DNA of 64,000 nt from Chlorokybus atmophyticus (taxonomy: Eukaryota > Plantae > Mesostigma and Chlorokybus algae). The notes beneath the pieces were generated by a model that saw only the letters and a list, made by a program, of their open reading frames with translations, was not told the DNA's origin and did no database searches. The position numbers and the translations under genes are program-made. The stretch is from NCBI GenBank assembly GCA_009103225.1, contig RHPI01000446.1, positions 1-64,000 on the forward strand. The letters run 5' to 3'. Of the stretch, positions 1 through 38,709 are shown piece after piece (position 1 is the stretch's first letter; every line of letters starts with the position of its first letter).

Positions 1-3000
1 GTAGGTGCGACTGTGGCAGTGCCCACTCGTGGAAGATCCTGCCATCAAGACAGCAGCACCGGCAGCGCTGACTGCGTCTCCACCCACCAATCGCAGCGAG
101 CCTCCAAGACCCTCAACATCATCTCCACTACCAGCGGCCACCAGTACATGCCCTGCTCCGCTTTCCGAATCGCCTGCACGCACGGTGACGTTGCCGCTGG
201 TACCTGCTACGGACTTGCCGCTGCTGATGAGGACGTTGCCAGAGCTGCTGCCGTCATGCACGCGCTCTGTGGCAAGCAGCAGCTGGCTGCCACCAATGAT
301 GGAGGCGCTTTGCGATGACNAGCTCGACAAGTCCAACTTGCCAATGCTTGAAACAGAAAGACGCACACCTTGCGCATCAGCGATGCCAAATGCCTCCGAG
401 GCTGCAGAAGCGATGGTGTGTGTTTGATTGGCCATCAACACCGATTGCCCGTAAGCACTCAACGTCAGAGCACCGCCAGCCGCGACATCCACGCCCTCAG
501 TCCCAGAGCTGCTCAAGGACACTGCACCTTCCGCGGACACCTTCACAGCAGCAGTGCCTGTGCTGTCCGCGATCGCCGCGTAACTTGCTGCCCCTGAAGG
601 GCTACTCATCACTGTTGTGAGAGCGGTGGCCACCATGCTGCTCGCACCGCCCACCGAGAGGTCAAAGCGTGTAGGGCCTAGGCTGATGCCGCTGTACGAG
701 GGATCGCCAGCGCCCACCACAAGCGTGATGTCGCCAGGCGTGCCGGTTGTTGCGCCGGTGCTAATGACCACATCGCCGCTGTCACCGCTGCACGATGCGC
801 CGCTAGCAATCTCGACAGCACCACTATTGCTGCCCATAGCCGCGCTACCCGAGCGAATGGAGACGTCGCCGCTGCTCATGCCTTCACCGCTGGCCACGAG
901 CACGCCGCCTCCAGCGCCCGCCAGCGCTGACCCGCCCAACAGCTGCACCGAGCCGCCATCACCGCCCAAGGAACCCGCTGAGCTTCCACCGCGGAGCATA
1001 GCCGGACCAGCTGCACCCATGGCTGAAGCTCCACCAGCCAGCTCCAGCATGCCACCGAGGCACGCTTGCGAGCAGCCCTGCTGTATGGCAGTGTAGACAT
1101 CATCATCGATAGTCGCGCCAGCGCAAGTCCTTTGGACTGCTCCGTAGAATGTGCACGCATCGACGCTGCAGCCCCGCTGCACGGCAAGGTATGTTGCCTC
1201 AGGGACAACGAGACCACCGCAAACGTATGGTGCTCCCGTGCAAGTGTTGGAGTTATTGGAAGCACCAGCTGCAACCAAAGCTTTGCCGCCTGATCCGCTA
1301 GTGCCCACACCACCAGCCACGACCACAGCGCCAGCGGCTGCACCGGCGCGCGCGCTTGCGCCTGCTCTGAGGGTAACGCCGCCAGCTAGGGCGCCATCAC
1401 TACCAACCACATGCACGCTGCCAGCAGCTCCCTCATACGCCAGCCCTGATGCGATAACAACATCACCAGAGTCACCTCTGGAAGCTTCACCGCTGCTGAG
1501 CAGAAGACGGCCGGAGCTGCCGCTGTCGGCACTCGTGAAGGTGATGTCGCCGCTGCTGCCGTGCGCATCGCTTGCTGCGCCGCTTGATAGGACAGCAGAC
1601 CCTCCTTTGTCGTAACCTTGACCACCTGTAACGACTACATCACCACCAGTTCCAGCTTGGGATCTGCCTGCGACAAACAAGAGCGCCCCTCCCGTGCCAT
1701 TAGTTGCAGCTGCACCACCAGATACGGACACGCTCCCGCCACTATCCGCAGCTGCATCGCCTGCAGTTATTGCAATGGCGCCACCTATGCCAATTCCGCT
1801 TGTGCCGGCTTCAAGTGCAACTGTGCCAGCTTGCGCTGTAGCAGCACCAGAGCCCACGAAGACCGCCCCACTGCTGCCATGAGTGCTGGCAGCTGAAGCC
1901 ACTGCAATAGACCCGCTGTCACCATGCGATGCGGCACCGCTTTGCACGAGGACAGAACCGCCCGTCTCCTCCATGGCAGCACCACCACGCACGAGTACAT
2001 CGCCTCCAGTGCCATCCACATTGCGTGTTGCTCCTGCAGTCACCACCACTGAACCGCCGTGGCTTGTGTCTCCGGATCCCACAGCCAACAATATGTCACC
2101 TCCTGCCCCGCCGCTGGCACGGCCTGTAGACAATTGCAATGCTCCTGTCGAACCAGCACAAGATGAACCGGTTGTGAGGTCAATGGAGCCACTAACACCA
2201 GCCGGACCGCTATTCTCTGAGCGTATCAGCACAGGGCCGCTCCAGCTGCCGTCATCGCCTTCGCCACTGGAGATCAGAACTGCGCCACCAGGGCCTGAGC
2301 TTGATCTGCCTCCTACGACTGAGACTGCCCCACCCAGGCCATGAGCGTCCCCGATGCCATGCCCACCCCTCAGCAAAATAGAGCCTCCCGCACCAGAGTC
2401 TGAATCGCCGCCAGCAATCTGTGCATGACCGCCCATGCAGCTCTGCGTGCACCCTGCCATGACTGCATCGTACATGCCGCCATCAACAACTTCCTCGCCA
2501 CATGTGTACATTGCCGTGCCGTAGAAGGAGCAGTCTTTTTCACATCCAAGGCTTATAAACCTATACACAGCAGCTGGCACCATCAAACCGCCACAGTTGT
2601 ACTCGGCAAGGTTGCAGTCGCCTTCGCCGCTGCTATGGCCTCCTTGCACAACTACTCGACCTGCATGCCCTGTACTGCTTCCACCAGCCATGAGATGCAC
2701 AGCTCCACCAGGTAAGGTTCCGAAACTACTGCCCGCAGAAACATGGACGTCTCCACCTGCACCCATCTCGCTGCTCCCAGCAGAAACCTCAACATCACCA
2801 GCTCGCGCATTCATGGAGGCGCCAGTCTGCAGTACCAAAGAGCCAGTCCTGCCGTGCTGCTGTGGCGTAGCCACAGTTATGTTGGCGCCCTCGATTGAAC
2901 CACTGCGCCCGCTGCTGAGAAAGACAGCACCGCCGACACCATGGGTGGCATTGCCGGCAGCAATGGAAACCGCTCCACCAGCACCATGCAAGGATTCACT

Positions 3001-6000
3001 AGTGCCGGCTGTGATGGTGACATTACCGCTGTCCCCAGCATCGCTGCTCCCTGTAGCGATGTGGATGCTACCGGAGCTGGCTTGGGAGTCTCCCGTGCGC
3101 ATGTCAAGGGCGCCACTAGGCGTGTCCGCAGCTACAACGGTGGCGGAGGCGATGGACACGTTACCGCTGCCGGCTGTGCCCCGCCCTTGACCGCTGAGGA
3201 TACGCACAGCACCACCGCTGCCAGAGCCCGTGCCCACAAATGCACCGCCCCTGACAAGCGTGTCACCGCCTTGGCCGCTCATGGCGGAGCCGCCACTGAC
3301 TTCGACTGCTCCGCCACCGCACGCGCTTGTGCAGCCGCTGGCGACGGCGTCAAAGGCTTCGCGATCGAGCATCACTCCATCTCCGCACATGATGTCATCA
3401 CCACCAGCACCGTAGAAGGCGTAGTCCACGCTGCAGCCGCTGTGGAAGGCAGCCATGACCTCCTCGGACACTACCATCCCGGAGCAATTGTACGTAAGCG
3501 TGGCACAAGGTGTCGCACTGCTTCGAGCACCTCCAGTGAGAGAAACAGTGCCTGCTGTGCCGGATGGAGTGGTGCCGCCGAGCAATGCAACCGTGCCACC
3601 GATTGATTCAAGTACAGCCATCCCGTCAGCGGACATGCGCAATTGCGGGGTGCTCACGTCAACCTCGCCTTCACCACCAACGCGTACGCGCGTGCTCCCC
3701 TGCGCATCCTTCACAGCAACATACCCGCTGTGTTCGGCAGTGGCAAGGGTGATGTTGCCACCGCTGCGCATGCCGATGTTGCGCTCGGTGGCCGTCGTGA
3801 CAAAGACGGTGCCATTGCCATGCACTTGCACAGGTATGCCGCCACTGTAGTCCTCAATGCCAGCAATACTCATGGTAGACGCCGTGCGCAGCGCTGTGCG
3901 CGTGTGCGACACACTGAGCGCAAGGTTGTCCTCCAAAGAGTAAGCCAGACCACCAGCCGTGAGTTGTAGCCTGCTAGGGCTAGCGCTGAATGCAGAGCCC
4001 GCACCAACTTGTAGGCTGATGCTGCCAGGCGCACCCTCAGTGCCACCCGTTTGTAGTGCGATGTTGCCGCTTTCACCCGAGCATGATGCACCAGTCTCAA
4101 GAAGTACGTCTCCAGAGCGACCGCTTGACGGGCTTGAGCCAGATCGCACGATGACTGCGCCAGATATGTCTCCATCTCCGCTAGCAACCAACACGCTGCC
4201 GCCAGCACCTGACTTGGAGCTGCCAGCTCGCAGCATGGCAAGTCCGCCAGCTGCATGCAAAGCATCACCACCAGTGATGGCCACGGCACCGCCGCCACAC
4301 CTAGACGTGCAGCCAGCAAGAGCAGCAGCGTACATGGCTTCGTCAACAACATGATCGCCACAATGCCGCTGTGTGACGCCGTAGAACTCGCAACTGCTCT
4401 CGCACCCTGCCATGATGGCCTGGTGCACAGCATGAGACATGATAATGCCAGAGCAGTTGTACTCCAGCGTGCAATCGTCAGCGGTTGCTTCGCCTGCCGA
4501 GATAAGTACAGAACTTCCCGCAAGAGTGCCATGCATGCCGGTGATCTCAACCAAGGAAGCACTGAGAGTTGCACCGTCAGAAGCCAGGCGCAACCAAGCA
4601 TTCTCGTCGGTGCTGCTTGCCATGACCAAGCCAGCTGTCACGTTCACTTGGGAAGTTCCCGCAAGAACGGTGGTAGTGGCTGAAGCTGTGAACATATCAT
4701 CACTGACAAGCTGCATGTGACTAGAGGCATCCAAGCCAACAGTGCCGTTGCCACCCACTCGTACGCGTGTGATGCCCGAAGCGTCGGCTACAGCGACGTA
4801 GCCACTCTGTTGAGCAACAGCAAGCGCCATATTCCTGCCACTGTTGATGGAAATGTCGCGCTCCCCGCTGGTTGAGACTGAGACTGTGCCATTGCTGTAC
4901 ACCTTGATCGGCATGTTGCCATTAACATCCTCAATGCCAGCCAAACCAGACACGGAGGGAGTGCGGAGCGCTGCACGCGAAGACGATGCGTGGAGAGCAA
5001 TGCCGTTGTCCACAGTGTAGACAAGTTCTTCCTCAGCCAGCTGAAGCTTGCTGCGGCCTGCAACAGACATAGACGCCGAGCCCTCAGACAGCTCCAGATC
5101 CGTTGCTGAGGTGCCCACCACCAAGCTTATGTTGCCGGCAGCACCGCTACTGGCACCAGTTTGAAGGGAGATGTGCCCTGTATCTCCTGAGCATGACGAG
5201 CCAGTGCTCAATGCGAGAGAGCCGCTCGCAGCATCAAGGGCGCCGCTCGCCGATCTCAGCACCACATCACCGCTGCTCAGGCCTGCGCCGCCACCACCGC
5301 TTGTGATAATCACCTCACCTCCCAACCCGAGAGCTGAGCTGCCGCCTGAAACGAGGGCTACGCCGCCATTGCCAGCCATTGCATGACCACCACCGACTGA
5401 AACAGCACCACCCGCACAGCGCGGCGTGCAACCCAATGAGACAGCATGTACTATATCGGCATCAACAAGCATGGACGCTGTGCCACACAGGTGCTGGTCA
5501 GCACCATAGAACGAGCAGCCGCCGTCGCACCCCTCGATAACAGCTCTGTACACATCAGGCTCCACGTCCATGCCACCGCACAAGTAGGTGCGACTGTGGC
5601 AGTGCCCACTCGTGGAAGATCCTGCCATCAAGACAGCAGCACCGGCAGCGCTGACTGCGTCTCCACCCGTCAAGTGCAGCGAGCCTCCGAGACCCTCAAC
5701 ATCATCTCCACTACCAGCGGCCACCAGTACATGCCCTGCTCCGCTTTCCGAATCGCCTGCACGCACGGTGACGTTGCCGCTGGTACCTGCTACGGACTTG
5801 CCGCTGCTGATGAGGACGTTGCCAGAGCTGCTGCCGTCATGCACGCGCTCTGTGGCAAGCAGCAGCTGGCTGCCACCAATGATGGAGGCGCTTTGCGATG
5901 ACGCGCTCGACAAGTCCAACTTGCCAGTGCTTGAAACAGAAAGACGCACACCTTGCGCATCAGCGATGCCAAACGCCTCCGAGGCTGCAGAAGCGATGGT

Positions 6001-9000
6001 GTGTGTCTGATTGGCCATCAACACCGATTGCCCGTAAGCACTCAACGTCAGAGCACCGCCAGCCGCGACATCCACGCCCTCAGTCCCAGAGCTGCTCAAG
6101 GACACTGCACCTTCCGCGGACACCTTCACAGCAGCAGTGCCTGTGCTGTCCGCGATCGCCGCGTAACTTGCTGCCCCTGAAGGGCTACTCATCACTGTTG
6201 TGAGAGCGGTGGCCACCATGCTGCTCGCACCGCCCACCGAGAGGTCAAAGCGTGTAGGGCCTAGACTGATGCCGCTGTACGAGGGATCGCCAGCGCCCAC
6301 CACAAGCGTGATGTCGCCAGGCGTGCCGGTTGTTGCACCGGTGCTAATGACAACATCGCCGCTGTCACCGCTGCACGATGCGCCGCTAGCAATCTCGACA
6401 GCACCACTATTGCTGCCCATAGCCGCGCTACCCGAGCGAATGGAGACGTCGCCGCTGCTCACGCCTTCACCGCTGGCCACGAGCACGCCGCCTCCAGCGC
6501 CCGCCAGCGCTGACCCGCCCAACAGCTGCACCGAGCCGCCATCACCGCCCAAGGAACCCGCTGAGCTTCCACCGCGGAGCACAGCCGGACCAGCTGCACC
6601 CATGGCTGAAGCTCCACCAGCCAGCTCCAGCATGCCACCGAGGCACGCTTGCGAGCAGCCCTGCTGTATGGCAGTGTAGACATCATCATCGATAGTCACG
6701 CCAGCGCAAGTCCTTTGGACTGCTCCGTAGAATGTGCACGCATCGACGCTGCAGCCCCGCTGCACGGCAAGGTATGTTGCCTCAGGGACAACAAGACCAC
6801 CGCAAACGTACGGTGCTCCCATGCAAGTGTTGGAGTTGTTGGAAGCACCAGCTGCAACCAAAGCTTTGCCACCTGATCCGCTAGTGCCCACACCACCAGC
6901 CACGACCACAGCGCCAGCGGCTGCACCGGCGCGCGCGCTTGCGCCTGCTCTGAGGGTAACGCCGCCAGCTAGGGCGCCATCACTACCGACCACATGCACG
7001 CTGCCAGCAGCTCCCTCATACGCCAGCCCTGATGCGATAACAACATCACCAGAGTCACCGCTGGAAGCTTCACCGCTGCTGAGCAGAAGACGGCCGGAGC
7101 TGCCGCTGTCGGCACTCGTGAAGGTGATGTCGCCGCTGCTGCCGTGCACATCGCTTGCTGCTCCGCTCGACACCACGACGGCTCCTCCATGGTTGACTGA
7201 AGAGCCGGCCTTGATTGCCACTGTTCCACCATGACCGCTTGACGAAGTCGTGTTTCCTGCCTGCAATAGCAGCGCCCCTCCGCTGCCAGTGTCTCCTGTG
7301 CCTGCCGATATGGACACGGGCCCGCCCGCGCCGCCCACAGCAGCACCCGATGCGATAGACACAAGTCCTGATGAAGCACTAAGGCTTGAGCCCGTTTGCA
7401 GCAAGATTGCTCCCGTGCTGGAGCCTGTACCAGCCGTTGTTGTGCTCACGATGATGCTGCCAGAAGCACCATGTGAGCTGCTGCCACTGCTCAGTGTGAT
7501 GCTGCCTCCTTCCAGACTGGCCGCACCCACCGACGAGGCTTGCATCGAGTCACCTGCCGCCACGAGAACATCACCACCGTCGGCACCGTTCCCAGCCAGC
7601 AGCTGCAAGGCACCACNGTTGCCGTCCACTTGCTGCGCCGCTTGATAGGACAGCAGACCCTCCTTTGTCGTAACCTTGACCACCTGTAACGACTACATCA
7701 CCACCAGTTCCAGCTTGGGATCTGCCTGCGACAAACAAGAGCGCCCCTCCCGTGCCATTAGTTGCAGCTGCACCACCAGATACGGACACGCTCCCGCCAC
7801 TATCCGCAGCTGCATCGCCTGCAGTTATTGCAATGGCGCCACCTATGCCAATTCCGCTTGTGCCGGCTTCAAGTGCAACTGTGCCAGCTTGCGCTGTAGC
7901 AGCACCAGAGCCCACGAAGACCGCCCCACTGCTGCCATGAGTGCTGGCAGCTGAAGCCACTGCAATAGACCCGCTGTCACCATGCGATGCGGCACCGCTT
8001 TGCACGAGGACAGAACCGCCCGTCTCCTCCATGGCAGCACCACCACGCACGAGTACATCGCCTCCAGTGCCATCCACATTGCGTGTTGCTCCTGCAGTCA
8101 CCACCACTGAACCGCCGTGGCTTGTGTCTCCGGATCCCACAGCCAACAATATGTCACCTCCTGCCCCGCCGCTGGCACGGCCTGTAGACAATTGCAATGC
8201 TCCTGTCGAACCAGCACAAGATGAACCGGTTGTGAGGTCAATGGAGCCACTAACACCAGCCGGACCGCTATTCTCTGAGCGTATCAGCACAGGGCCGCTC
8301 CAGCTGCCGTCATCGCCTTCGCCACTGGAGATCAGAACTGCGCCACCAGGGCCTGAGCTTGATCTGCCTCCTACGACTGAGACTGCCCCACCCAGGCCAT
8401 GAGCGTCCCCGATGCCATGCCCACCCCTCAGCAAAATAGAGCCTCCCGCACCAGAGTCTGAATCGCCGCCAGCAATCTGTGCATGACCGCCCATGCAGCT
8501 CTGCGTGCACCCTGCCATGACTGCATCGTACATGCCGCCATCAACAACTTCCTCGCCACATGTGTACATTGCCGTGCCGTAGAAGGAGCAGTCTTTTTCA
8601 CATCCAAGGCTTATAAACCTATACACAGCAGCTGGCACCATCAAACCGCCACAGTTGTACTCGGCAAGGTTGCAGTCGCCTTCGCCGCTGCTATGGCCTC
8701 CTTGCACAACTACTCGACCTGCATGCCCTGTACTGCTTCCACCAGCCATGAGATGCACAGCTCCACCAGGTAAGGTTCCGAAACTACTGCCCGCAGAAAC
8801 ATGGACGTCTCCACCTGCACCCATCTCGCTGCTCCCAGCAGAAACCTCAACATCACCAGCTCGCGCATTCATGGAGGCGCCAGTCTGCAGTACCAAAGAG
8901 CCAGTCCTGCCGTGCTGCTGTGGCGTAGCCACAGTTATGTTGGCGCCCTCGATTGAACCACTGCGCCCGCTGCTGAGAAAGACAGCACCGCCGACACCAT

Positions 9001-12000
9001 GGGTGGCATTGCCGGCAGCAATGGAAACCGCTCCACCAGCACCATGCAAGGATTCACTAGTGCCGGCTGTGATGGTGACATTACCGCTGTCCCCAGCATC
9101 GCTGCTCCCTGTAGCGATGTGGATGCTACCGGAGCTGGCTTGGGAGTCTCCCGTGCGCATGTCAAGGGCGCCACTAGGCGTGTCCGCAGCTACAACGGTG
9201 GCGGAGGCGATGGACACGTTACCGCTGCCGGCTGTGCCCCGCCCTTGACCGCTGAGGATACGCACAGCACCACCGCTGCCAGAGCCCGTGCCCACAAATG
9301 CACCGCCCCTGACAAGCGTGTCACCGCCTTGGCCGCTCATGGCGGAGCCGCCACTGACTTCGACTGCTCCGCCACCGCACGCGCTTGTGCAGCCGCTGGC
9401 GACGGCGTCAAAGGCTTCGCGATCGAGCATCACTCCATCTCCGCACATGATGTCATCACCACCAGCACCGTAGAAGGCGTAGTCCACGCTGCAGCCGCTG
9501 TGGAAGGCAGCCATGACCTCCTCGGACACTACCATCCCGGAGCAATTGTACGTAAGCGTGGCACAAGGTGTCGCACTGCTTCGAGCACCTCCAGTGAGAG
9601 AAACAGTGCCTGCTGTGCCGGATGGAGTGGTGCCGCCGAGCAATGCAACCGTGCCACCGATTGATTCAAGTACAGCCATCCCGTCAGCGGACATGCGCAA
9701 TTGCGGGGTGCTCACGTCAACCTCGCCTTCACCACCAACGCGTACGCGCGTGCTCCCCTGCGCATCCTTCACAGCAACATACCCGCTGTGTTCGGCAGTG
9801 GCAAGGGTGATGTTGCCACCGCTGCGCATGCCGATGTTGCGCTCGGTGGCCGTCGTGACAAAGACGGTGCCATTGCCATGCACTTGCACAGGTATGCCGC
9901 CACTGTAGTCCTCAATGCCAGCAATACTCATGGTAGACGCCGTGCGCAGCGCTGTGCGCGTGTGCGACACACTGAGCGCAAGGTTGTCCTCCAAAGAGTA
10001 AGCCAGACCACCAGCCGTGAGTTGTAGCCTGCTAGGGCTAGCGCTGAATGCAGAGCCCGCACCAACTTGTAGGCTGATGCTGCCAGGCGCACCCTCAGTG
10101 CCACCCGTTTGTAGTGCGATGTTGCCGCTTTCACCCGAGCATGATGCACCAGTCTCAAGAAGTACGTCTCCAGAGCGACCGCTTGACGGGCTTGAGCCAG
10201 ATCGCACGATGACTGCGCCAGATATGTCTCCATCTCCGCTAGCAACCAACACGCTGCCGCCAGCACCTGACTTGGAGCTGCCAGCTCGCAGCATGGCAAG
10301 TCCGCCAGCTGCATGCAAAGCATCACCACCAGTGATGGCCACGGCACCGCCGCCACACCTAGACGTGCAGCCAGCAAGAGCAGCAGCGTACATGGCTTCG
10401 TCAACAACATGATCGCCACAATGCCGCTGTGTGACGCCGTAGAACTCGCAACTGCTCTCGCACCCTGCCATGATGGCCTGGTGCACAGCATGAGACATGA
10501 TAATGCCAGAGCAGTTGTACTCCAGCGTGCAATCGTCAGCGGTTGCTTCGCCTGCCGAGATAAGTACAGAACTTCCCGCAAGAGTGCCATGCATGCCGGT
10601 GATCTCAACCAAGGAAGCACTGAGAGTTGCACCGTCAGAAGCCAGGCGCAACCAAGCATTCTCGTCGGTGCTGCTTGCCATGACCAAGCCAGCTGTCACG
10701 TTCACTTGGGAAGTTCCCGCAAGAACGGTGGTAGTGGCTGAAGCTGTGAACATATCATCACTGACAAGCTGCATGTGACTAGAGGCATCCAAGCCAACAG
10801 TGCCGTTGCCACCCACTCGTACGCGTGTGATGCCCGAAGCGTCGGCTACAGCGACGTAGCCACTCTGTTGAGCAACAGCAAGCGCCATATTCCTGCCACT
10901 GTTGATGGAAATGTCGCGCTCCCCGCTGGTTGAGACTGAGACTGTGCCATTGCTGTACACCTTGATCGGCATGTTGCCATTAACATCCTCAATGCCAGCC
11001 AAACCAGACACGGAGGGAGTGCGGAGCGCTGCACGCGAAGACGATGCGTGGAGAGCAATGCCGTTGTCCACAGTGTAGACAAGTTCTTCCTCAGCCAGCT
11101 GAAGCTTGCTGCGGCCTGCAACAGACATAGACGCCGAGCCCTCAGACAGCTCCAGATCCGTTGCTGAGGTGCCCACCACCAAGCTTATGTTGCCGGCAGC
11201 ACCGCTACTGGCACCAGTTTGAAGGGAGATGTGCCCTGTATCTCCTGAGCATGACGAGCCAGTGCTCAATGCGAGAGAGCCGCTCGCAGCATCAAGGGCG
11301 CCGCTCGCCGATCTCAGCACCACATCACCGCTGCTCAGGCCTGCGCCGCCACCACCGCTTGTGATAATCACCTCACCTCCCAACCCGAGGGCTGAGCTGC
11401 CGCCTGAAACGAACGCTACACCGCCATTGCCAGCCATTGCATGACCACCACCGACTGAAACAGCACCACCCGCACAGCGCGGCGTGCAACCCAATGAGAC
11501 AGCATGTACTATATCGGCATCAACAAGCATGGACGCTGTGCCACACAGGTGCTGGTCAGCACCATAGAACGAGCAGCCGCCGTCGCACCCCTCGATAACA
11601 GCTCTGTACACATCAGGCTCCACGTCCATGCCACCGCACAAGTAGGTGCGACTGTGGCAGTGCCCACTCGTGGAAGATCCTGCCATCAAGACAGCAGCAC
11701 CGGCAGCGCTGACTGCGTCTCCACCCGTCAAGTGCAGCGAGCCTCCGAGACCCTCAACATCATCTCCACTACCAGCGGCCACCAGTACATGCCCTGCTCC
11801 GCTTTCCGAATCGCCTGCACGCACGGTGACGTTGCCGCTGGTACCTGCTACGGACTTGCCGCTGCTGATGAGGACGTTGCCAGAGCTGCTGCCGTCATGC
11901 ACGCGCTCTGTGGCAAGCAGCAGCTGGCTGCCACCAATGATGGAGGCGCTTTGCGATGACGCGCTCGACAAGTCCAACTTGCCAGTGCTTGAAACAGAAA

Positions 12001-19400: not shown

Positions 19401-22400
19401 GCCGCCAGCACCTGGATGTTGCTCACTGTGACCTGCTGTGAGAATGATGCTGCCACCTGGTGCATGACTGCCGTGGCCAACAGTCAAAGTGATGTTACCA
19501 CCAGACCCATCAAGCGCAGTGCCAGTTTCAATGTTAATGTCGCCACTGTGTCCGCTTTGCGCCCTCCCGGAAAATACGTTGATAGCACCAGCAGAAGCTG
19601 CGGCTGACGAGCCCGTGCCAAGTGTGAGATTTCCAGAAACTCCAAGTGGACCTGAGTCGGCTGTATGAACCACTATTGCGCCACTATCCTTAGCTAGACT
19701 ACTGCCACTGGTAAGCGTGATGGAGCCGCCAACTCCGGTTGCAATTTCTCCGCCTTCAAGGACAACTGCACCACCAGCATCATTGCTAACATCGCTAGCG
19801 AAGCTTTTACCACCTGTGATGGTGACTGTGCCACCCTGTCCACCAACATTGCTCAACCCGCTGCCTGCCTCAACAACAACGTTCCCACCAGTTTGGAAAG
19901 AACCAACTGTGTTGCCCGCATGCAAGTTGATAGTGCCACCTGCTTCTTGGCCTGCACCAACAGCAATTGATACGCTGCCACCTGATCCCTCATGCGCAGT
20001 TCCAGTCCTCAAACTGATGTCTCCACTATCGCCTGCGCAGGACGACCCGGTAGTTACATGAACACCACCGCTCACACCCATTGAGCCACTGCTTTCAGTT
20101 CTGAGGGTAACATTTCCACTGCTGGAGCCGTCGTTGCCTTCGCCACCAGCTATAACAACAGCACCTCCCGGGCCAGATGCGGAATATCCTCCCAACACCT
20201 CCACAGTGCCACCCATCCCATGTGCATCACCAAGGCCAGCTCCACCTTTGAGGATGACATGTCCGCCAGTACCAGCTGAAGACAGACCACCTGACAGCTC
20301 CACATTGCCACCTAGACACTGCTGTGTACACCCTTGACGAACAGCATTGTATACCACTTCATCTACCATGACATTGTCATCGCATGTGTACATGGCGTCT
20401 CCGTAAAATGCGCAGTCTTTCTCACAGCCTGCCTGCACTGCTCTATGCACATCCGACGACACAACTAGGCCACCGCAATCGAAGGCTTCAAGACGGCAAG
20501 CTTCAAAGCCCGCTGCATGGCCACCAGTGAGCACGATGGCTCCTCCACGAGCACCATTGCTTTGACCTGTGCCGCCGACCAACTGTACTGTTCCACCTGC
20601 ACGCTGAGGGCCATTCGTCGCACCGGCGCCAAGCACCACATCCCCACCATCATGATGCTCAGCACACCCAACGTGCACAATGATGGACCCAGCTGACCCT
20701 GTCGCATTTCCAGTACTGATGTCAATTTGACCTGAGCTGGCTGCCGTTGACAGCCCAGTAGTCAGCGTGATGGGACCACTGCTGCCAATGGTCGAAGCAT
20801 CCGCAGTTGACAAGCTTACACTTCCAGTAGTGGCAGTGGCGCTGGTGCCGCTTCCAATGATTACATTACCACCACTGCCCGCAGCAGAGGTACCACCAGT
20901 CATAATGACCGATCCACCAAAGTGTCCAGCTGCTGTTGTGCTTCCGGCTTGCAGAACGACATCACTGCCATCCCCTGTGTCGCCAGCTCCGACAACCAAC
21001 GCGATCGGGCCTCCACGACCATGTGTGCCATCACCTGACACTATTGTGATGCTGCCGCCATCACCATCTGCTGAAAGACCGGTTTGCAGTACCATAGAGC
21101 CAGCTGTGCCAGCTGCTGATGAACCCGTTTGCAATGTAACGTGTCCACTAGAGCCCATGGTGCCTGATGGAGCCGTTTCTATGTTGACATCTCCACTGGA
21201 AGTGTGGCTGCCTCCACTAGTCAAATGCAAAGCACCACCGCTGCTGCTTGCAGCTTCTCCTCCAGATATTTGCACATCCCCTCCAGGTTGATCAACTCGA
21301 TGCTGACCCAACGACCGTCCTCCAAAGATGGACACACTGCCACCTTTCCCAAAACCGAATGGTGCGGTGTTCAAGCTGCTGCCAGCGCGTAACACAACCT
21401 CACCACCATCACCCTCGCCGGAGCTTGTGTGCCCAGCATTGATGCTGATGAAACCTCCATTACCAACAGTGCCATTGCCAACTGTCATAACCATATCGCC
21501 TGCAGCTCCATCGCGTGCAGCCCCTGTCCGCAACTCAAGACCACCACTTGTGCCTGCACACGCTGTTCCCGTAGCGATAGCTATGCTGCCACTCATGCCT
21601 TGAGACCCACTGTTTTCGGACCTGATGCTCACATGGCCACTGCGTACCGCGTTATTGCCCTCCCCGCTTGCAATCAATACAGCACCACCAGGGCCTGAGG
21701 CTGAATAACCGCCCAGCAGCTGCACATCACCGCCCATTCCATGGTCCGCACCGACACCATCACCTCCCTTCAACCAAATGGAGCCACCTAACACAAGCAT
21801 GCGCTTAGAAATAGTGCACATGCACGTTTGCACCACGGAAGCATAAGCACACACGTACGCACGGACGCGCATCATAACATGCACACCGAAAATGCACGTG
21901 CGCACACGCACACATGCATGCACGCTCGCGTACACAGTAACAACTACAGTTACCCACCTGTTCCTGCTGCAGACTCTCCGCCCAGAAGTTTGATGTCGCC
22001 TCCTAGGCATCTTTGCATGCAACCAGCACGAATGGCTGCATATGTTGTGGGATCCACAGCAATGTTGCTTGCGCACATGTAGCTGGATGTGCCATAAAAT
22101 GAACAATCCTGCTCGCAGCCAGCTCGGACAGCGGAGTATACCTCTGAGCTCACAATCAGCCCACCACAGTCATATTGTTCCAACTGACAGGTTCCATCCT
22201 TGCCATAGCTTTCTCCGCCTTGTAATACGATTGCTCCACCGCGACCTCCACGCTCATTTTCACCAGCACCACCAGCAAATGCAACACCACCACCACTAGC
22301 ACCTTCTTCCCTTGTTGCCCCGGCAACAACTGTGACATAGCCACCATCACCAACATCCCCCGTACCGATCAGCAAGGCTATGTCACCTGCAGCACCTGAT

Positions 22401-25400
22401 GTGGTGTTGCCAGTCGACACTACAACATTTCCGCTGTGACCTAATCTGGACGACCCAGTGTGCGTAGCGGAGCTTATACTCACATCGCCACTGCTGTGTT
22501 GAACGCCAACACCACTCATCAGCAACAGGCTACCACCACGTCCAGTGAGAGACTGTCCTCCTTGGAGCAGAATGGCACCCCCTGCATCATCAGCTCCAGA
22601 TGTGTGCCCTGCTTGCAAGAGTACACTCCCACCTGCTCCTGTGTCACCAGCCCCAACCGTCAGAGCAATGTCCCCTCCAGCACCCATCTGTGCAGAGCCA
22701 GTGGAAACGGTGAACGCCCCAGAATTGCCATTGCTAGAAGGACCTGTAAACATGTCAATGCCCCCACTTACACCTTGGGCACCTGATGCGGCAGTCTCAA
22801 AAATGATGCTGCCGCTGTTATGCTGTTGACTTGTACCAGAGGCGACAGCAATGTCGCCACCATTACCTCCTACAGCTACACCGCCCTGCAGCTGAATGCT
22901 GCCTGCATGATCTGTTGTTGCCGTACCCAAGGCATCTCCACCAGCGAGCACCACTTTGCCACCCGCTGGTGTACTAATTGCACCATTGTAAGATGTCCGA
23001 CCACCCGTAATGAGTACACTCCCTGCCGTATGTGCAGCATGTGAGGTTTCCCCAGCGGTGATGGATACACTGCCACCATCTCCCTGCGAGCTCATTCCAC
23101 TGGAGACCGCAATAGAGCCAGTGCCGCTTTGTGCTGCAGTTGGGGTTGCCAGAACAATGTTGCCACTCGGACCTTGGCCACTGACGCCGCTAAGCAACTG
23201 CAGGTCACCACCTGCTGCTGCATTAGCTGAGCCTGCACTCAAGTGAATGCCACCACCAATGTTGTTGCTGAACGAGTGCCCAGCCTGAACGAGCACAGAA
23301 CCTCCAGTTCCTCCAGTTACAGCATCAGCACTAACAGCATTGCCAGCTGCAAGCAAGACAGAGCCACCGATCTGAGTCACATCACCGTTGGAAGCACCAG
23401 CTGACAATGACAAATCTCCTCCTGAACCGGTTCCAGCAGCTCCTACTTTGATGTCGATAGTACCGCTGGAGCCAAGAGGAGAATTTCCAGTAGAAATAGA
23501 GAATTGGCCAGAATTGGCGTTTTGACACATACCTGTTGCTATGGAAACATCTCCACTGGCTGCATGTCCCGTACTGGTTGCTATAGATACAGGGCCACTC
23601 GACCCACTAACGCTAGCACCACTCAAGATCTGCACACCTCCACCTGCCGCAGCAGCTGCTGCACCACCAGCCAGCCGGATGTCACCACCTACGTCTGCAC
23701 TACCGGTACCTTGCGCATCTCCTCCAAGTACTTCAACGATGCCACCTGAACCTCCGTGACCAGAGCTGCTGGTGCTTGACCCTGTACCGGCTCTGAGAAA
23801 TATAGAGCCACCAGTGCTGGAGACAGCTGAGGCATGACCGGCTGCCAGATTGATGTTCCCACCATTGGATGTGCTTGATGCTCCAATTGTTAGATGCATG
23901 TTGCCCGCAGCTCCTCCAGAGCTCTGCCCGGTGACAAGAGCAATCCCACCGGAAGCACCTGTTGAGTCTCCAGTGTTTATTAAGATACTGCCGCTCGTGC
24001 CTGATGTACCCGAATTGCTGGTGCTCAGGTGAACATTGCCAGATGAAGTGGCAGTGCTGAAGCCACTGGCCAAGAGCAGGTTACCACCATGACCACTCGC
24101 AGCTAAGCCACCAACAATGACAACATCTCCTCCATAGTCAATGGAGGGATTGCCACCATCAGCAGTTCCGCCTGATATGAACACCAAGCCACCGTTACCT
24201 CCGTCAACCGCAGATGTGCTCAACCCTTCACCACCCATTATTGTCACCTTTCCACCAACACCACCAACTGCAGTAGCTGCGCCAGCAATGAAGTCCAGGT
24301 CGCTGCCAACCAGTGAACTAGACCCAAGTACAATGTTGAATTTACCAGCCTGCCCATTAGCAGCACTGCCCGTAATCACTGTGATGTCACCAGAAGGACC
24401 ACTGGCGGCCTTGCCAGTTCTCAACGTGATTGGCCCACTAGATCCTGCTGGCCCTGAATCTTCGGTTTGTATGGTCGCACTGCCGCTACTGCCTTGCACG
24501 CTTGTGCCACTGGACACAATCACATTGCCTCCTGATGCAGTTGCAGCACGACCTGCATACATTGTCAGGTTCCCTCCGGTGTTTCTGGTGTTCAAGCCCT
24601 TTGCTTCTCCTGCAATCACTGCAATCGACCCTCCAGCGCCACCATTTGAAGCATCGGAGCTGAAACCAGAGCCTGCAGCAATCAACACAGCTCCTCCAGC
24701 ACTGGCAGGACCAAGGGTATCACCAGCTGTAATCTGCACGGCGCCCCCTCGGCCTGTGTTACCTCTGCCAATAGCCAAGCTGATGTTACCAGAAAGCCCA
24801 GTGGTTGTCCCAGTGGACCCAGTGGTCATAAAAATAGTGCCAGAAGAACCAACTGCAGCGTCTGCCGTTTGAACCAGGACATCTCCACTAGAGCTTCCAG
24901 CACTTTGACCACTGATAACATGCACAACGCCTCCTGCAGCTGCCTGAGCAGAGCCTCCAAACAGGCGCAGCGCACCACCATTGTCATTGTCCGCTAAAAC
25001 AGGGTTGGATGATGTCCCACCAACCACTGTAACATTACCACCTGTTTTCAATGTGCTGATGCCCCCGGAGACAGTGACAGCACCTCCAGCGCCGCGATCC
25101 GAGGCCCCACCATATATATAAGCAGATCCACCGTCCTGCAAGGTGCTGGCATCCCGTGCTGTAGTTATACTTGTCGCAACTCGGGCGTCACCTCCACGAA
25201 CAGCAACATCACCTCCGACAACTTGTGAGGTGACGGCAGTCATCCAACCTTGGCCTCCAACAATGCTAACACGACCAGCCTTCTTCCCTGAGTCTGTTGC
25301 TGTTCCTGCATGCACAGAGATGTTCCCACCATGGCCAACTGTGCCATTGCCGACTGTCAGGCTGAGTTGACCGCCTGCTCCTCGAAGAGAACCACCTGTG

Positions 25401-28400
25401 GCAACTGTAACTGCGCCAGCATCGCCAGTGACAGCAAGACCTGAGCTGAGCAGTGCAGTTCCACTTCCACCCTGCAGGCTCGTTGAGTTGCCATCAGCGG
25501 TTTTCAAAACCAGGTTCCCTGAAGTTATGTTCGAGCTGGCACCTGTAATTATACGCACATTGCCTCCGGCATAGTTAATACCAGCTCCAGCTGATATTGC
25601 AACGTCACCACCTGCTGCACTGGATGACTTCCCGCCAGATACTACTATGCTTCCACCGGAATAACCTCTAGAGGTTCCGACATTGTCGGCGAGAGCATCA
25701 CCGCCATACAACTCCACAGCCAGTCCTCCGAATAGAGTCACATTCCGACCAGCTGCCATACTCACGCTGCCATAGGCAAGCCTGCGGTCCATGCTGGCGC
25801 CCGTTTCGCTCGGTCGAGCATAGCCAGCAGTGACGGTTACATTTGCACCATAACCAGCAGTAGATGTCCCTGTGCCAAAAAGCATGTTGCCTGCCTTGTT
25901 GCCAGCCAGTCCTGTTGAGATGACCAAATCGCCACTGATGTCTGCTGCGGAGCCAGTGGACAGAGACATACGACCACTGCTGCCAGCTGCCCCAAGAGTT
26001 GCTGCAGCTGTCGCAATATCAACTCGACCACTTGCAGCAGCAGCATTTGAGCCAGCTGCTCCGGAGGTTAACAGGATTGAGCCACCCCCATCGAGGAGTC
26101 CGGCACCACCTGACAGCACCACAGAACCACCCAGGCCATTAACTGCCCGCTGGCCAGCTCCACCAATTACCGAAACGCTGCCACCAGCACCACTAACTCC
26201 AACGCCGGCTGCCAGTGAGATTGCTCCACCGGTTGCAGCATCGCTCAGGGTTCTGCCAGCAGTAAGGGTGATGTCGCCGCCATCGGAAGCTGCATTATCA
26301 CCAACAGTCAGGCGTATCCTACCCCCAGGACAGTGGGATGCACCGGATGGACATCGCCAGTTGGTTAGAGATCCGCTGGAAGCACCTGTCTCAAGCAAAA
26401 TGGCTCCACTGCCACCAGCATTACCACTCGACGATGTGCGCACATACAGCATTCCACTGTGTGTAGCGTCACCAATGCCAGTTGTAATGTTGACGCTGCC
26501 ACCACCATCAAGACCTTTTGCTGACCTGCCACCTGTCAACTCCAGATCTCCGCCTTTTCGTCCTCCACTTCCACCAGACAAGCTCACATTGCCTCCCACA
26601 CCATTCGGATTCAGTACTAATCCTGAGGCGGAGTCAATATTCAATGCTGCCCCTGCAGTAATGGTGACGCTACCACCTCGTGCGACATTGGCAGCAGAAG
26701 CATCCGTTGCTGCACCAGCAGTTAGATGTACACCGCTGCCAGCAGATGTACTGTCTCCAACTAGCAAAGAGATAGAGCCAGCCTTTCCTCCTTGAGCATA
26801 GATGGCTTTTCCAGTCTGCAACACAAGACGACCACTAGTGCCTCCAGCTGCATCGCCGCTGGCAATGGCAACACTCCCCGTCGAAGCCGCGGCTGGTGCT
26901 GTCTGCATGACGATGCTACCACTGCCTCCCAAAGAACCAGCTTGCGCAGCACTATCTCCACTGCTGATGGTGACTGCGCCTCCTGTTGTGCCCTTTGATC
27001 GACCACCACTTATTGTTACAGACCCACCATCACCAATCCCGGTTCGTTTGGTGGGATCCGCTAAGCTGGACTCCAGTAAGCCCGAACCCTCGCCACCTGT
27101 GACAACCACACGTCCACCTACACCATACACAGTTGACAACCCTGCACCTGCACTGAATAGCAGAGCTCCACCGATGGCCGAGGTTGTGCCGCCAGCCTGA
27201 AGCGAGATTGGTGCACCAGCACCTGCACTGCTTTGCCCCACGCTCACTGTGATCGAACCTGCTTGACCACCTGATCCGCTGCCAAGCACAGCATTTGCTG
27301 TGCGAACAGTGATGCTGCCGCTTGCCGCATCTGTGCTGGTGCCTGTACTGATGCCGATTGAACCTGAGGAGCCACTGGTTGCTGGACCGCTGGCCAGCAC
27401 CACGCCCCCAGAAGACCCGGCCACGCCACCAGCAGCAGTTGTCAAAGACACACTTCCACTGTTGCCTGTCCAGCCGGCTGCACCAGAGCCTCCGCTTTGG
27501 ATGGTAACAGAACCAGCAGTTGCACCCGTCACAGCTGAGGATCCGCCCAGTAGCTCCAACAATCCACCTGTGCGCCCAGCAATAATATGCAGCTCCGAAT
27601 CGCCACGTATGGTATTCTTCACATCCCCCTGAGGTGTGTAGAAGAGATTCTGTGCACTTGCAGGAGGGTCTGAAGCTTGTTGCCCGTATCCATCAAAGAA
27701 AATACCACCAAGCTTCATGCGGCTTCGACTGTCGATGTTAATGTAGTTGGCGCTAGTCAGGAACAGCTCCTTGGCCTCCCCAGTACTGTACTTGCCAACA
27801 TCAAACCCAAAGGCAGTGTCTGTTGAAATGCCAAGACGGCTCACACACTCAGATCGACGCGTGGCTGCGTCACCTGTGGGTGTGGAACAGCCATCAAGCT
27901 CCACGTCTCGTGCAATGAGACGCGGCCTGCCTCTGCCACTGTACTGCCCTGGCAGCGACAAACTCTTGCTCAGGCCTATCTCCACAGCCAAATCGCTTCT
28001 AAGGTACAGGGACTTCGATGCAAGTGTCGTGGCAAGGCTGGGCTCATTGCCATCTGCAAGCAGTGACCCTACTCGCAAGCGGCTGGCCTCGTCAACACGC
28101 ACCTCGGAAGTGCTTCGCAGCACAAGGATGCCAGTGTGCAAACTTGTAGAACTTCCACTTCCAGTTGCTGGGGCAACGGTGAGCAATGTCGCTCTGTCTG
28201 TGCTTGTTGAGTTGATAGGGGCTCCATCCTGCAGCAGCGCAGAACCAATACGTAACCTGGCTTGGCCAAGAACGCCACCGCCATCCACATACACATCACC
28301 GGGGTCCGAGCCACGAGCAGCGGCTGTCAGTAGCAACGACCCGGACGACGCCAGCTTGCATGACCCGCCATCGCTGCTGTCATCGGCAAGGACTAAACCC

Positions 28401-29855
28401 CCTACTGTTAAGCTGAGTGCACCGTCAAGTGCCACACCTTCAGAGCTGCTCAGCAACAGGGGCTTTGATGTTGAAGTTTGTGTCACACCGCTACCACTGA
28501 GCTGCAAGGCATCAACGCCTTCTGCGCCAGCACCCACAAAAAAACTTGGCGCCTGAACCTTGACAGCACCAGTAGGGTTGGTCAAGTAGAGCGGCAGTGA
28601 CTCCGGACTTGAGACAGCAATCTCCATGACCGCGAGGGGTGCTCCATCAGAGTCTTGGTAAGAGTCGCTGCGCTGAAGCAGCATGTCTCCAACCTTCAGC
28701 CGCGTTCCCAAGAACTGTCGTGGGCCCGTGCCGTCATCCACAATGGAACCCACCTCCATGCTGTATGCAGGTAAAAGCTGCACAGTCGACTTGGAGGATG
28801 ACACCCGCAGAAATGGGCTGGACGCGTTGCTGAAAAGAATCTCGCTGCCTGTGATGCCTTGCTCAACGGACACCGAGAATGCACTGGATCCGCGAGTCAA
28901 GCCTAAATGCACACTCTCGCTGCTGGCAGGAGAAGACAGCACCAGAGAAACAGCACCAGTAGCTGTTACGTCGAGCGATGCCGCAGCGGTGGCAGCCCCG
29001 GGTGCTCTGCTATCTTGTGCTTGGAGGATTGTAGCTCCTGCACTGCCTTGAAGTTGCAGATAGTCTTCTGTAGCTACTATGTCGTACGTGTTGGTGGAGC
29101 CATCATCACTCTGGCGGTTGAAATGCAGAGTTGCGTCGCTGCCCTGGCCCCGCACTTCCAGCACGCTACTTGTGCCAGACAGCGTCAAGCGAGCATTGCC
29201 ATTCTTATCTGTTTGGATGGCGAACAGCTCACCCAGCCCAATGCTGTCATACCACTCCGTTTTTAAGGCAAGGGACTGACTTTGAGCACTAGCGTCTGTG
29301 GAAGCGGCCAAGTACAGTGAACTGGACTCCGACACTGCTGCAGTTGACAAAAAAGACCGGAAAACCAGCTCGGACGTCTGTTGAAACAGAACAACTAGTC
29401 AACACAAGTACAGACAGGAGGCACCCGTCAACCTTTGCAGAACAGCAATTCACCTCAATGCTTCCTTCCACGCTCAAGCTAGACACGTCATTCGGACGCA
29501 CAAGCAAGGCGTTGCCAACATACACGTCACCATGAATGTTAAGGTTGTATCGATCCATGGTGCCAAACGGTCCTGCACAAGAAAACAGATTGGCACGTGA
29601 AGCAGCCACAGCATTGCAGTGTGCAAAGCACGCAAGCATGCTTACCAATGTTGGTGTGCCCATGCAATGTTATGTTTTCGCCGCCGTCCACAGTGACCCA
29701 TGCTCTGTGGTATAGGCGCAACACAAGATCAAGCAAGTTCATGCTGTGATTGCGCATAGCATGTATAGCACGTCAAGGCAGCCAACGACTTACCGCGCAC
29801 TGTGAGCAAACACAGCTGCTAGCAGCAGCAGCAGCACAGGACGGGAAAAGCGCAT
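1..29855 (-). CDS. Giant secreted Gly/Ser/Ala-rich repeat protein with recurrent Cys-rich modules; spliced, at least ~9,800 aa, 3' end beyond the window
   Basis: Exons 29794-29855, 29646-29704, 29454-29572, 21958-29326 and 1-21787 join in frame. ORFs 21950-29350, 12939-22106 and 7571-12973 plus a frame from 7616 to position 1 (7616-6901 translated by hand with no stop; the rest is homologous to 7571-12973) all encode the same GG-x-V-x-I-x-(A/S/T)G repeat language. Confidence 0.85.
21788..21957 (-). other. Intron 4 of the giant gene (170 nt, phase 1)
   Basis: ACA G|GTGGGTAA ... CTTGTGTTAG|GT GGC TCC; the intron is (GT)n/(CA)n-rich. Splicing gives AGTGGSIWLKGGDG, matching paralogous repeats such as AGTGGHVILKGGAG. 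Confidence 0.9.
29327..29453 (-). other. Intron 3 of the giant gene (about 127 nt; acceptor uncertain)
   Basis: The donor GAG|GTGAAT is phase 0. The nearest phase-0 AG that enters the 2466-aa frame is GGAG|TCC at 29327. The better-looking acceptor TTTTTTGTCAACTGCAG is out of phase with this donor. Confidence 0.5.
29573..29645 (-). other. Intron 2 of the giant gene (73 nt, phase 1)
   Basis: ATT G|GTAAGC ... TTTTCTTGTGCAG|GA CCG; joins HTNI-G-PFGTMDRYNLNIHGD in frame. Confidence 0.85.
29705..29793 (-). other. Intron 1 of the giant gene (89 nt, phase 2)
   Basis: GCG CG|GTAAGT ... CTATACCACAG|A GCA TGG; splicing restores the frame HSAR-AWVTVDG. Confidence 0.8.
29794..29855 (-). CDS. Exon 1 of the giant gene, encoding an N-terminal signal peptide
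   Basis: ATG at 29855 gives MRFSRPVLLLLLAAVFAHSA(R), followed by a GTAAGT donor. It has a basic n-region, a hydrophobic h-region and A-R-A at -3/-1 after splicing. Confidence 0.8.
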
Positions 29856-38100: not shown

Positions 38101-38700
38101 CGTGGAGACAATAACTTCCTCAATTGCACATAACAGATCTGGGCAATTGTCGTACCACCTGATTGTGCGTGCCGCGCCTCGATGACGTCCGACGCAGCTT
38201 GAATGGATTCTCCACCACTTCGTTCGATGGTGAGCGCGCGCTTCCTGCAATTGATGGATTATGTTGCCATAGCCACGGTAGTTTCAATATCCCGTCAAAC
38301 CCGTTCCGTAGGGTGATGCAGCAAAATCGCATGTTCTCCTTCATCTTCCCAATGCGAACGCACAACTCTTTGGTCATAAACGCAGCGCCATCACCTCCAG
38401 AGGGTGGCTCATTATCAGCGAGCTTCACTTCACCTCCTCGTAATGACGAAAGCCAACCGTAACGCCGCGCGATATCAATACTCATGAAGTTGCTGTTGGC
38501 ACCGCTATCAATCATGAGCTTACACTCTCTCCATCGTCCTTGGTCATCGCAAATGTGTGCTCGAAGCCCAAAGTACTTTGTTGTCTCCTCGTTTGCATAA
38601 CTCACCACCATTGGCGCGCTGAAAGCCATCTCCTCTTGCTTCTTTAATGGAAAAGTCACAGCATCCGTCCGTGCATGAGGCTCCTTCCTATCCCCAGCAG
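35194..38700 (-). pseudogene. pol: pol of chromovirus 1, fragmented by several frameshifts
   Basis: Protease LMIDSGAN; RT SPYGAPILFV, MCVDYRALN, FGLTNAPATFQ, YLDD; integrase HDVPIAGH, MDFITGLP, STAFHPQTDGQTERANR; chromodomain EWEVEDIL...[18 protein letters not shown]. Confidence 0.93.
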
Positions 38701-38709
38701 TAGCCTCAC

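What the first reader, a model, noticed from the sequence alone, without database searches (positions are those of the whole stretch)
1..29855. A secreted protein of at least ~9,800 aa, encoded largely by one >21.8-kb exon and hidden from the ORF track
Seen in sequence: four GT-AG introns join exons of 62, 59, 119, 7369 and at least 21,785 nt in frame (80+2456+7262 codons). No stop appears before the window edge once two padding Ns are removed. The chain is mostly ~14-15-aa G-x-[VI]-x-[LIV]-x-[AST]-G repeats and carries a signal peptide. Inference: it is a very long beta-solenoid or fibre-like extracellular structure (adhesin, cell-covering or extrusome filament). I recognise no named eukaryotic family for it. 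This is the best candidate for an undescribed system in the window.
Basis: partly seen in the sequence, partly recalled or inferred. Interest (0 to 1): 0.85.

Follow-up and report, generated by a model that had tools for sequence, protein, structure and literature searches.

The report
Giant secreted glycine-rich fibre gene
A real alga-type gene encodes a secreted protein of at least about 8,000 residues, built from 15-residue glycine-rich repeats and an undescribed seven-cysteine knot; it belongs to an unstudied protist family whose relatives carry the phage tail-fibre folding domain, but its stated length rests on a doubtful assembly.

Summary
The gene is real and lies on the minus strand. 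Its ATG is at 29855, and a signal peptide and four GT-AG introns follow. The reading frame stays open to the window edge.

A transcript-derived Nephroselmis pyriformis protein of 3,798 aa is colinear with residues 7-2466. It crosses the first three splice junctions.

Contigs from a 90-97% identical relative differ mainly at third codon positions, so the frame is under purifying selection.

The 15-residue repeat is confirmed. Eighteen copies of a conserved 7-Cys module punctuate the chain. The module has no Pfam family and no fold match.

The two Ns are not padding. They are scaffold joins inside a 5,583-nt tandem array of 98-99.9% identical units.
- The block between the Ns is a 99.9% copy of 1571-6910.
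- The join at 12962 cuts a Cys module.

About 8,030 aa are non-redundant, and the true length is unknown.

About 600 clusters of relatives exist, in green algae, oomycetes and ocean plankton, and none is characterised. Thirteen of 194 fetched relatives carry Peptidase_S74, 30 carry the Cys module, and none carries both.

The best reading is an elongated extracellular fibre, probably trimeric and tail-fibre-like. A monomeric beta-solenoid is not excluded. Earlier first-reader notes of this scan had already flagged the Cys module on this same stretch and a possible paralogue on another piece of the genome.

The parts
29794..29855 (-). Exon 1 (62 nt): ATG and signal peptide
   Evidence: It aligns with the N-terminus of the Nephroselmis protein P0180.
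29646..29704 (-). Exon 2 (59 nt), between introns 29705-29793 and 29573-29645
   Evidence: Canonical GT..AG. The junctions are spanned by the alignment to P0180.
29454..29572 (-). Exon 3 (119 nt), followed by intron 3 (29378-29453)
21958..29377 (-).
   Evidence: Third-position bias in a related organism's contigs.
21788..21957 (-). Intron 4 (170 nt, GT..AG)
   Evidence: Paralogous modules confirm the join residue by residue.
12963..21787 (-). Exon 5, unique part: six super-repeats, each a 7-Cys module plus a 300-600 aa stalk. The last module (12963-13040) is cut by the join.
12962..12962 (.). Single N: a scaffold join that skips at least 406 codons of the repeat unit
7618..12961 (-). Block B (1,781 aa, five Cys modules): 99.9% identical to 1571-6910. 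Either a third unit of the array or an assembly duplicate.
7617..7617 (.). Single N: a second scaffold join at the repeat boundary
1..7616 (-). Block C (2,538 aa, six Cys modules). It contains a contiguous tandem repeat (1-1584 = 5584-7167, 98.4% identical, period 5,583 nt). The frame is still open at the window edge.
20286..20516 (-). Representative 7-Cys module (C-x6-C-x16-C-x3-C-x9-C-x17-C-x3-C, then LGG), used for the structure model. Other copies: 22007-22207, 18780-19007, 17328-17561, 15543-15776, 14475-14714, 12671-12901, 11444-11677, 10325-10549, 9347-9583 (a variant lacking one Cys), 8465-8692, 6613-6843, 5386-5619, 4267-4491, 3289-3525 (variant), 2407-2634, 1030-1260.

Best explanation
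This is a genuine nuclear gene under selection. It encodes a giant secreted protein that forms an elongated, beta-rich extracellular fibre. After signal-peptide removal, a short conserved cap leads into thousands of residues of 15-aa glycine/serine/alanine-rich repeats, each with one short strand of alternating hydrophobic residues followed by a glycine-rich turn. From about residue 2,480 the stalk is broken every 300-600 aa by a compact, disulfide-rich 7-Cys domain. Relatives with the same stalk repeats carry the Peptidase_S74 intramolecular chaperone at the same kind of interval. That domain folds trimeric phage tail fibres. I therefore infer that three chains assemble into a tail-fibre-like stalk a few hundred nanometres long, and that the Cys domains act as registration or cross-linking knots in place of S74. 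The likely role is structural or adhesive, in the cell covering (wall, sheath, scales or hairs). Shown: gene structure, selection, secretion signal, repeat anatomy, family membership, and the mutually exclusive S74 and Cys modules. Inferred: trimer, knot function, location and role.
For: Gene model and signal. Conservation: Nephroselmis pyriformis MMETSP protein P0180 scores E 1e-241 on one super-repeat. Its residues 16-2916 are colinear with ours 7-2466 (31% identity, 784 bits). Its N-terminus aligns across our three splice junctions (52% identity, E 1e-18). Selection: of 40 listed differences in contigs from a related organism, 25 lie at codon position 3 and 25 of 39 changed codons are synonymous (chi-square p 1.9e-4). 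Family size: 596 clusters at E<1e-3 and 122 at E<1e-10, with named members in Lagenidium, Aphanomyces and Nephroselmis and in Tara metatranscriptomes. Tail-fibre link: PF13884 occurs in P0004 (three copies), P0182, P0183, P0045, P0035 and P0056. A home-made S74 profile finds 13 of 194 relatives, the Cys profile finds 30, and none has both. S74 recurs every 365-390 aa in P0004. The weak fold neighbours are tail fibres, S74 proteins, collagen-like proteins and gp5/VgrG. The Cys module is modelled with confidence (pLDDT 78-94 in context, 76 alone) and is conserved outside this genome, with the signature GCTQxCLGG.
Against: No S74 domain occurs in the 9,814 aa encoded in the window, even with all filters off, and the C-terminus lies outside the window. 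The trimer could not be modelled. The monomer model is poor (pLDDT 59), and its non-glycine segment weakly resembles monomeric beta-helices and beta-rolls (Z at most 4.4). No spliced reads were obtained: run X1 holds unspliced, DNA-like contigs, and run X2 is only flagged 'RNA?' and comes from a relative. No localisation or proteomic data exist. Most relatives are fragments, so the 'none has both' count is soft.
Confidence: 0.55

Rival explanations
1. The stalk is a monomeric beta-solenoid or beta-roll adhesin. Each 15-aa unit makes one coil of a single-chain helix, as in the 14-aa YadA-head roll, 15-aa insect antifreeze helices or autotransporter passenger domains. The Cys domains would be spacers or ligand-binding beads.
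For: The repeat is strictly 15 aa with alternating inward-type hydrophobic residues. The model's residues 162-302 weakly match the CAP C-terminal beta-helix, antigen 43, RTX blocks, MpAFP and pectate-lyase-like adhesins (Z 2.2-4.4). A profile gave a marginal match to the FwdC beta-helix (E 0.74).
Against: All these matches are below the noise level stated by the tool. The best-modelled glycine-rich stretch (residues 100-180, pLDDT about 78) has no intrachain strands, as expected for a chain that needs partners. Each 15-aa unit has only one clear strand. Relatives carry the trimer-specific S74 chaperone. There are no Pfam hits to Pmp, Hep_Hag, YadA or autotransporter repeats.
Confidence: 0.3
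2. The gene is real, but the reported size is an assembly artefact. Block B (7618-12961) would be the same DNA as 1571-6910 placed twice, and the two N joins would be false. The true protein would then have a different length, shorter or, if the array is collapsed, longer.
For: The block is 99.9% identical and bounded exactly by the two Ns, whereas the contiguous neighbouring units are only 98.4% alike. The join at 12962 cuts a Cys module and skips at least 406 codons.
Against: A tandem array is present without any N (1-1584 = 5584-7167), so extra units are plausible. A patch of differences at 5332-5362 shows that B is not a perfect copy. This rival concerns length only, not the nature of the gene.
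Confidence: 0.5
3. The locus is a dead or foreign element, for example a fibre gene from an endogenous giant virus or from a bacterial transfer, sitting in a transposon-rich region. It would not be a functional host gene.
For: The upstream 34 kb is filled with LTR-retrotransposon genes. Tail-fibre-like relatives exist in an archaeal MAG and among tailed-phage clusters.
Against: The gene has four spliceosomal introns and a eukaryotic signal peptide. More than 29 kb is free of stops. A related organism shows a synonymous-site bias. The gene is colinear with a Nephroselmis transcript protein. tblastn found no match in 50,697 phage records.
Confidence: 0.04

Closest known systems
Nephroselmis pyriformis MMETSP0034 protein CAMPEP_0182854040 (P0180, uncharacterised, 3,798 aa, C-terminally incomplete)
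   Same: Signal peptide, conserved N-terminal cap, about 2,500-3,000 aa of 15-aa glycine-rich repeats, then the 7-Cys module. It is colinear over 2,460 residues.
   Different: Only 31-39% identical. Just one Cys module is seen before the transcript ends. It has no function, name or literature.
Proteins with the Peptidase_S74 (PF13884) intramolecular chaperone: phage endosialidase and tail spikes or fibres, 'tail fiber domain-containing' proteins, and MYRF (PMC3742443, PMC8326128)
   Same: The glycine-rich stalk repeats are homologous to those flanking S74 in eukaryotic and archaeal relatives (E 1e-11 to 1e-38). Both have an elongated repeat stalk punctuated by a small folding or oligomerisation domain.
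   Different: No S74 domain in the 9,814 aa of the window. A 7-Cys module occupies the punctuating position. The protein is secreted by a eukaryote and is 10-20 times longer than phage fibres. There is no sequence match to GenBank phages.
Trimeric autotransporter adhesin head repeats (YadA-type 14-residue left-handed beta-roll) and chlamydial Pmp or autotransporter beta-helices
   Same: Short 14-15-aa repeats with a G/S/A-rich turn and alternating hydrophobic residues; GGA[IV]-like motifs; an adhesin-like, very long surface protein. This comparison is from my own knowledge.
   Different: No Pfam match to Hep_Hag, YadA_head or Chlam_PMP. There is no membrane anchor or beta-barrel in view. The lineage and secretion route differ.
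Giant relatives in unnamed eukaryotic assemblies (L001, NCBI GCA_024449685.1; L002, ENA ERZ28548066)
   Same: Continuous glycine-rich coding of at least 13 kb and at least 18 kb. L002 carries the same Cys module (P0174).
   Different: L001 uses S74 modules instead of Cys modules. L002 begins with a PPC-domain segment. Neither is characterised.

Membership tests
Uncharacterised protist family typified by Nephroselmis CAMPEP_0182854040 (cap + 15-aa stalk + 7-Cys module) | Conserved N-terminal cap directly after the signal peptide | tested here: met
   Residues 7-87 align with P0180 16-92 at 52% identity, E 1e-18.
Uncharacterised protist family typified by Nephroselmis CAMPEP_0182854040 (cap + 15-aa stalk + 7-Cys module) | Long colinear glycine-rich 15-aa repeat stalk | tested here: met
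   A 2,958-column alignment scoring 784 bits; E 1e-241 on one super-repeat; period 15.
Uncharacterised protist family typified by Nephroselmis CAMPEP_0182854040 (cap + 15-aa stalk + 7-Cys module) | 7-Cys module ending in GCTQxCLGG | tested here: met
   Eighteen copies here. The HMM finds it in 30 external proteins, including P0180.
Peptidase_S74 tail-fibre / tailspike-like proteins | Presence of the S74 intramolecular chaperone domain (PF13884) | tested here: not met
   No Pfam hit on any tile. An S74 profile built from relatives finds nothing at E<=10 with filters off. The C-terminus beyond the window edge could not be examined.
Peptidase_S74 tail-fibre / tailspike-like proteins | Stalk homologous to stalks that precede or follow S74 | tested here: met
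   phmmer hits to P0004, P0182, P0183, P0045, P0035 and P0056, all carrying PF13884.
Peptidase_S74 tail-fibre / tailspike-like proteins | Homotrimeric assembly | not testable with these tools
   Only monomer prediction is available. The monomer model has pLDDT 59.
Chlamydial Pmp / autotransporter beta-helix and YadA-type repeats | Match to Chlam_PMP, Hep_Hag, YadA_head or autotransporter profiles | tested here: not met
   No such family at E<=0.1 on any tile.
Secreted (classical pathway) protein | N-terminal signal peptide and no other membrane span | tested here: met
   The only hydrophobic 19-mer is at residues 6-25, followed by an A-x-A site. The homologue has the same layout. SignalP was not available.

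The most novel reading that the evidence does not exclude
Many protists would build giant extracellular filaments from a phage-tail-fibre-like trimeric stalk. In one branch, including this alga and Nephroselmis, a previously undescribed seven-cysteine knot would have replaced the S74 chaperone as the periodic trimerisation or cross-linking node. The result would be covalently stabilised fibres hundreds of nanometres long that form part of the wall, sheath, scales or hairs. That would be a new class of eukaryotic matrix fibre and a new protein domain.
Probability: 0.3. Interest if true: 0.8.

Novelty: new variant of a known kind. Interest (0 to 1): 0.6.

Why it matters
The protein parts of the coverings of early-diverging green and streptophyte algae (sheaths, scales, hairs) are almost unknown; a 2023 review states that the chemistry of Chlorokybus scales is unknown (PMC10762512). 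This gene belongs to a large, widespread family with no Pfam family and no literature that I could find. The family links eukaryotic extracellular fibres to the phage tail-fibre/S74 folding system, which in eukaryotes is so far known mainly from MYRF. It also offers a compact, conserved, disulfide-rich domain with no structural match. The locus is a caution as well: giant genes made of near-identical 5.6-kb units are where assemblies break, so published lengths for such proteins need long-read confirmation.

Tried and rejected
- Pfam on every tile of the protein gave only chance hits (DUF2917, ThiI).
- Pfam on the Cys modules gave nothing.
- PDB sequence searches with one super-repeat and with a profile gave nothing significant.
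- Foldseek and VIA searches of both models against PDB, AFDB clusters and the ESM Atlas gave no significant match.
- The search for homologous proteins with the N-terminal 600 aa of exon 4 found nothing. With the 531-aa super-repeat it also found nothing; the word filter was probably swamped by low-complexity words.
- tblastn against GenBank phages found no match.
- Read laying gave no spliced joints. The same-organism run holds unspliced, low-depth contigs, so RNA support for the introns could not be obtained, and the two N joins could not be tested with reads.
- Paper searches for the family and for assembly GCA_024449685 found nothing relevant.
- Extrusome and antifreeze readings were considered, but no evidence bears on them.
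Full report
**1. What is in the sequence**

The feature lies on the minus strand. Four long open stretches cover it: 29398-21953, 22169-12942, 12976-7574 and 7692-1. The window holds single Ns at 320, 7617, 12962 and 37418.

An ATG at 29855 opens a typical signal peptide. It is the only strongly hydrophobic 19-mer in all 9,814 residues.

Exons of 62, 59 and 119 nt are separated by canonical GT..AG introns (29793-29705, 29645-29573, 29453-29378). They add up to exactly 80 codons.

The fourth intron (21957-21788, GT..AG) joins the two long frames. The residues on either side of this join match, one for one, the sequence that follows the Cys module in the paralogous repeats. The junction is therefore confirmed internally.

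**2. Correction to exon 4**

An acceptor at 29379-29378 makes the exon start at 29377, giving 7,420 nt. This acceptor has a pyrimidine tract and CAG, and it is also in frame.

The seven residues it adds first align with a transcript-derived homologue, so I prefer it. The two models differ by 17 residues.

**3. The Ns and the length**

A self-comparison shows three things:
- 1571-6910 equals 7629-12968 at 99.9% identity.
- 1-1584 equals 5584-7167 at 98.4%, which is a contiguous tandem repeat with a period of 5,583 nt, or 1,861 codons.
- 12965-13470 equals 2541-3046 at 96.8%.

The block between the two Ns is therefore a near-perfect copy of sequence further down, and the Ns sit at its ends.

At 12962 the chain passes from the third cysteine of a Cys module straight into sequence that normally lies about 26 residues before a different module. 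By the repeat's own register, at least 406 codons are skipped.

The frame survives removal of the N because all units share a period divisible by three. It does not survive because the join is exact. These Ns are scaffold joins in a tandem array that the assembler could not resolve.

The non-redundant sequence is 5,495 + 2,538 = 8,033 aa. The extra 1,781 aa may be a real third unit or an assembly duplicate. The array also runs off the window, so the true length may be lower or higher than 9,800 aa.

The N at 320 aligns with a single base in the sister unit and is just an ambiguous base.

**4. Is it a real gene?**

One super-repeat finds a Nephroselmis pyriformis MMETSP transcript protein (P0180, 3,798 aa) at E 1e-241. 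Our spliced residues 7-2466 are colinear with its residues 16-2916 (784 bits).

Its N-terminus aligns at 52% identity across all three of our first splice junctions.

Public run X2 is flagged 'RNA?' and comes from a different but related organism. It holds contigs 90-97% identical over 24.2-29.0 kb. Of the 40 differences listed, 25 lie at third codon positions and 25 of 39 changed codons are synonymous (p 1.9e-4). The frame is under purifying selection.

Run X1 holds identical but unspliced low-depth contigs that cover introns, so it behaves as DNA. No spliced reads were obtained, so direct RNA proof of the junctions in this organism is still missing.

**5. Anatomy of the protein**

The composition is G 21%, S 14.5% and A 13%. 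Hydrophobic residues autocorrelate at lag 15.

The order along the chain is:
- signal peptide;
- a conserved cap of about 65 aa;
- about 550 aa of less regular sequence;
- about 1,870 aa of repeats;
- then, from residue 2,477, super-repeats of 297-595 aa.

Each super-repeat begins with a module of about 62 aa carrying seven cysteines. The module shows an internal two-fold pattern and ends in GCTQxCLGG. Eighteen copies are present, one of them cut at the join and two lacking one Cys.

No transmembrane segment is seen.

**6. Relatives**

An exhaustive phmmer search found 596 cluster representatives at E<1e-3 and 122 at E<1e-10. Nearly all are unnamed fragments from ocean metagenomes and metatranscriptomes.

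Named members come from the oomycetes Lagenidium giganteum and Aphanomyces euteiches, from Nephroselmis, and from an archaeal MAG annotated as 'tail fiber domain-containing'.

Two genomic loci hold relatives with at least 13 kb and at least 18 kb of continuous glycine-rich coding.

Partner domains in long relatives are:
- Peptidase_S74 in six of 17 scanned;
- Kringle in two;
- teneurin-type EGF in two.

Home-made profiles run over the 194 fetched relatives give 13 with S74, 30 with the Cys module and none with both. In P0004, S74 recurs every 365-390 aa, an interval similar to that of our Cys modules.

Our 9,814 residues contain no S74-like segment, even with all filters off.

**7. Structure**

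An AlphaFold monomer model of one super-repeat has pLDDT 59. The Cys module is confident (78-94). About 80 residues of glycine-rich stalk are modelled at about 78 but without intrachain strands. The non-glycine segment forms a low-confidence strand ladder.

The module alone gives pLDDT 76 and a two-fold strand-strand-helix layout. It has no match in PDB (Foldseek best E 0.77; VIA best Z 2.2) or in AFDB clusters.

Fold neighbours of the larger model are all weak. They include tail fibres, Peptidase_S74 proteins, collagen-like proteins and gp5/VgrG, uncharacterised chlorophyte and tailed-phage clusters, and, for residues 162-302, monomeric beta-helices and beta-rolls at Z at most 4.4. The fold is not settled.

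**8. Interpretation**

The shown facts fit a secreted, elongated fibre. The S74 chaperone is known to fold homotrimeric beta-helical fibres, both in phage endosialidase and in MYRF (PMC3742443, PMC8326128). Our stalk is homologous to stalks that carry that domain.

I therefore favour a trimeric, tail-fibre-like stalk in which the Cys module takes the place of S74 as a periodic registration or cross-linking knot (confidence about 0.45-0.55). A single-chain solenoid remains possible (about 0.3).

A structural or adhesive role in the cell covering is inferred from three things: secretion, size, and the adhesive partner domains of relatives.

I did not test that. If it is true, the sheath, the thin wall and the scaly zoospores are candidate locations; their protein parts are unknown (PMC10762512).

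**9. Surroundings**

The 34 kb upstream (30-64 kb) holds Ty3-type and copia-type retrotransposon genes and no partner gene.

**10. Verdict**

The gene is a new variant of a known kind: a tail-fibre-like repeat fibre with an undescribed cysteine domain, in an uncharacterised protist-wide family.

Noticed in passing
window 35194-39787 and 52375-56927: Two Ty3/gypsy-type retrotransposon copies on the minus strand, with gag, reverse transcriptase, RNase H, integrase and an SH3_Tf2-1 domain. The two gag ORFs (39059-39787 and 55863-56927) hit the same profile positions. A single N at 37418 lies inside the reverse-transcriptase region.
   Followed up: partly
window 59315-60571: A minus-strand ORF with a Pol polyprotein beta-barrel domain (PF22936), suggesting a copia-type element next to the gypsy copies.
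   Followed up: no
L001:5179-18413 (NCBI GCA_024449685.1): Three abutting ORFs in frames 0, 1 and 2 give at least 13 kb of the same glycine-rich repeats, with three internal Peptidase_S74 domains about 370 aa apart. If S74 self-cleaves here, the product would be cut into several fibre segments.
   Followed up: partly
L002:5208-23546 (ENA ERZ28548066, 1.07-Mb contig): A relative of at least 18 kb with many frame changes (introns or polishing errors). It starts with a PPC-domain segment, carries the same 7-Cys module, and lies next to a BRR2 helicase gene, so the contig is eukaryotic.
   Followed up: partly
P0001 and P0181 (relatives): Some relatives combine the stalk repeats with three Kringle domains, and others (P0183, P0060) with teneurin-type EGF domains. 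The stalk thus serves as a carrier for different binding heads.
   Followed up: no
window 5332-5362 versus 11390-11420: The only cluster of differences between the otherwise identical blocks B and C is a patch of about 30 nt. It could be a polishing artefact or a real difference between units.
   Followed up: no
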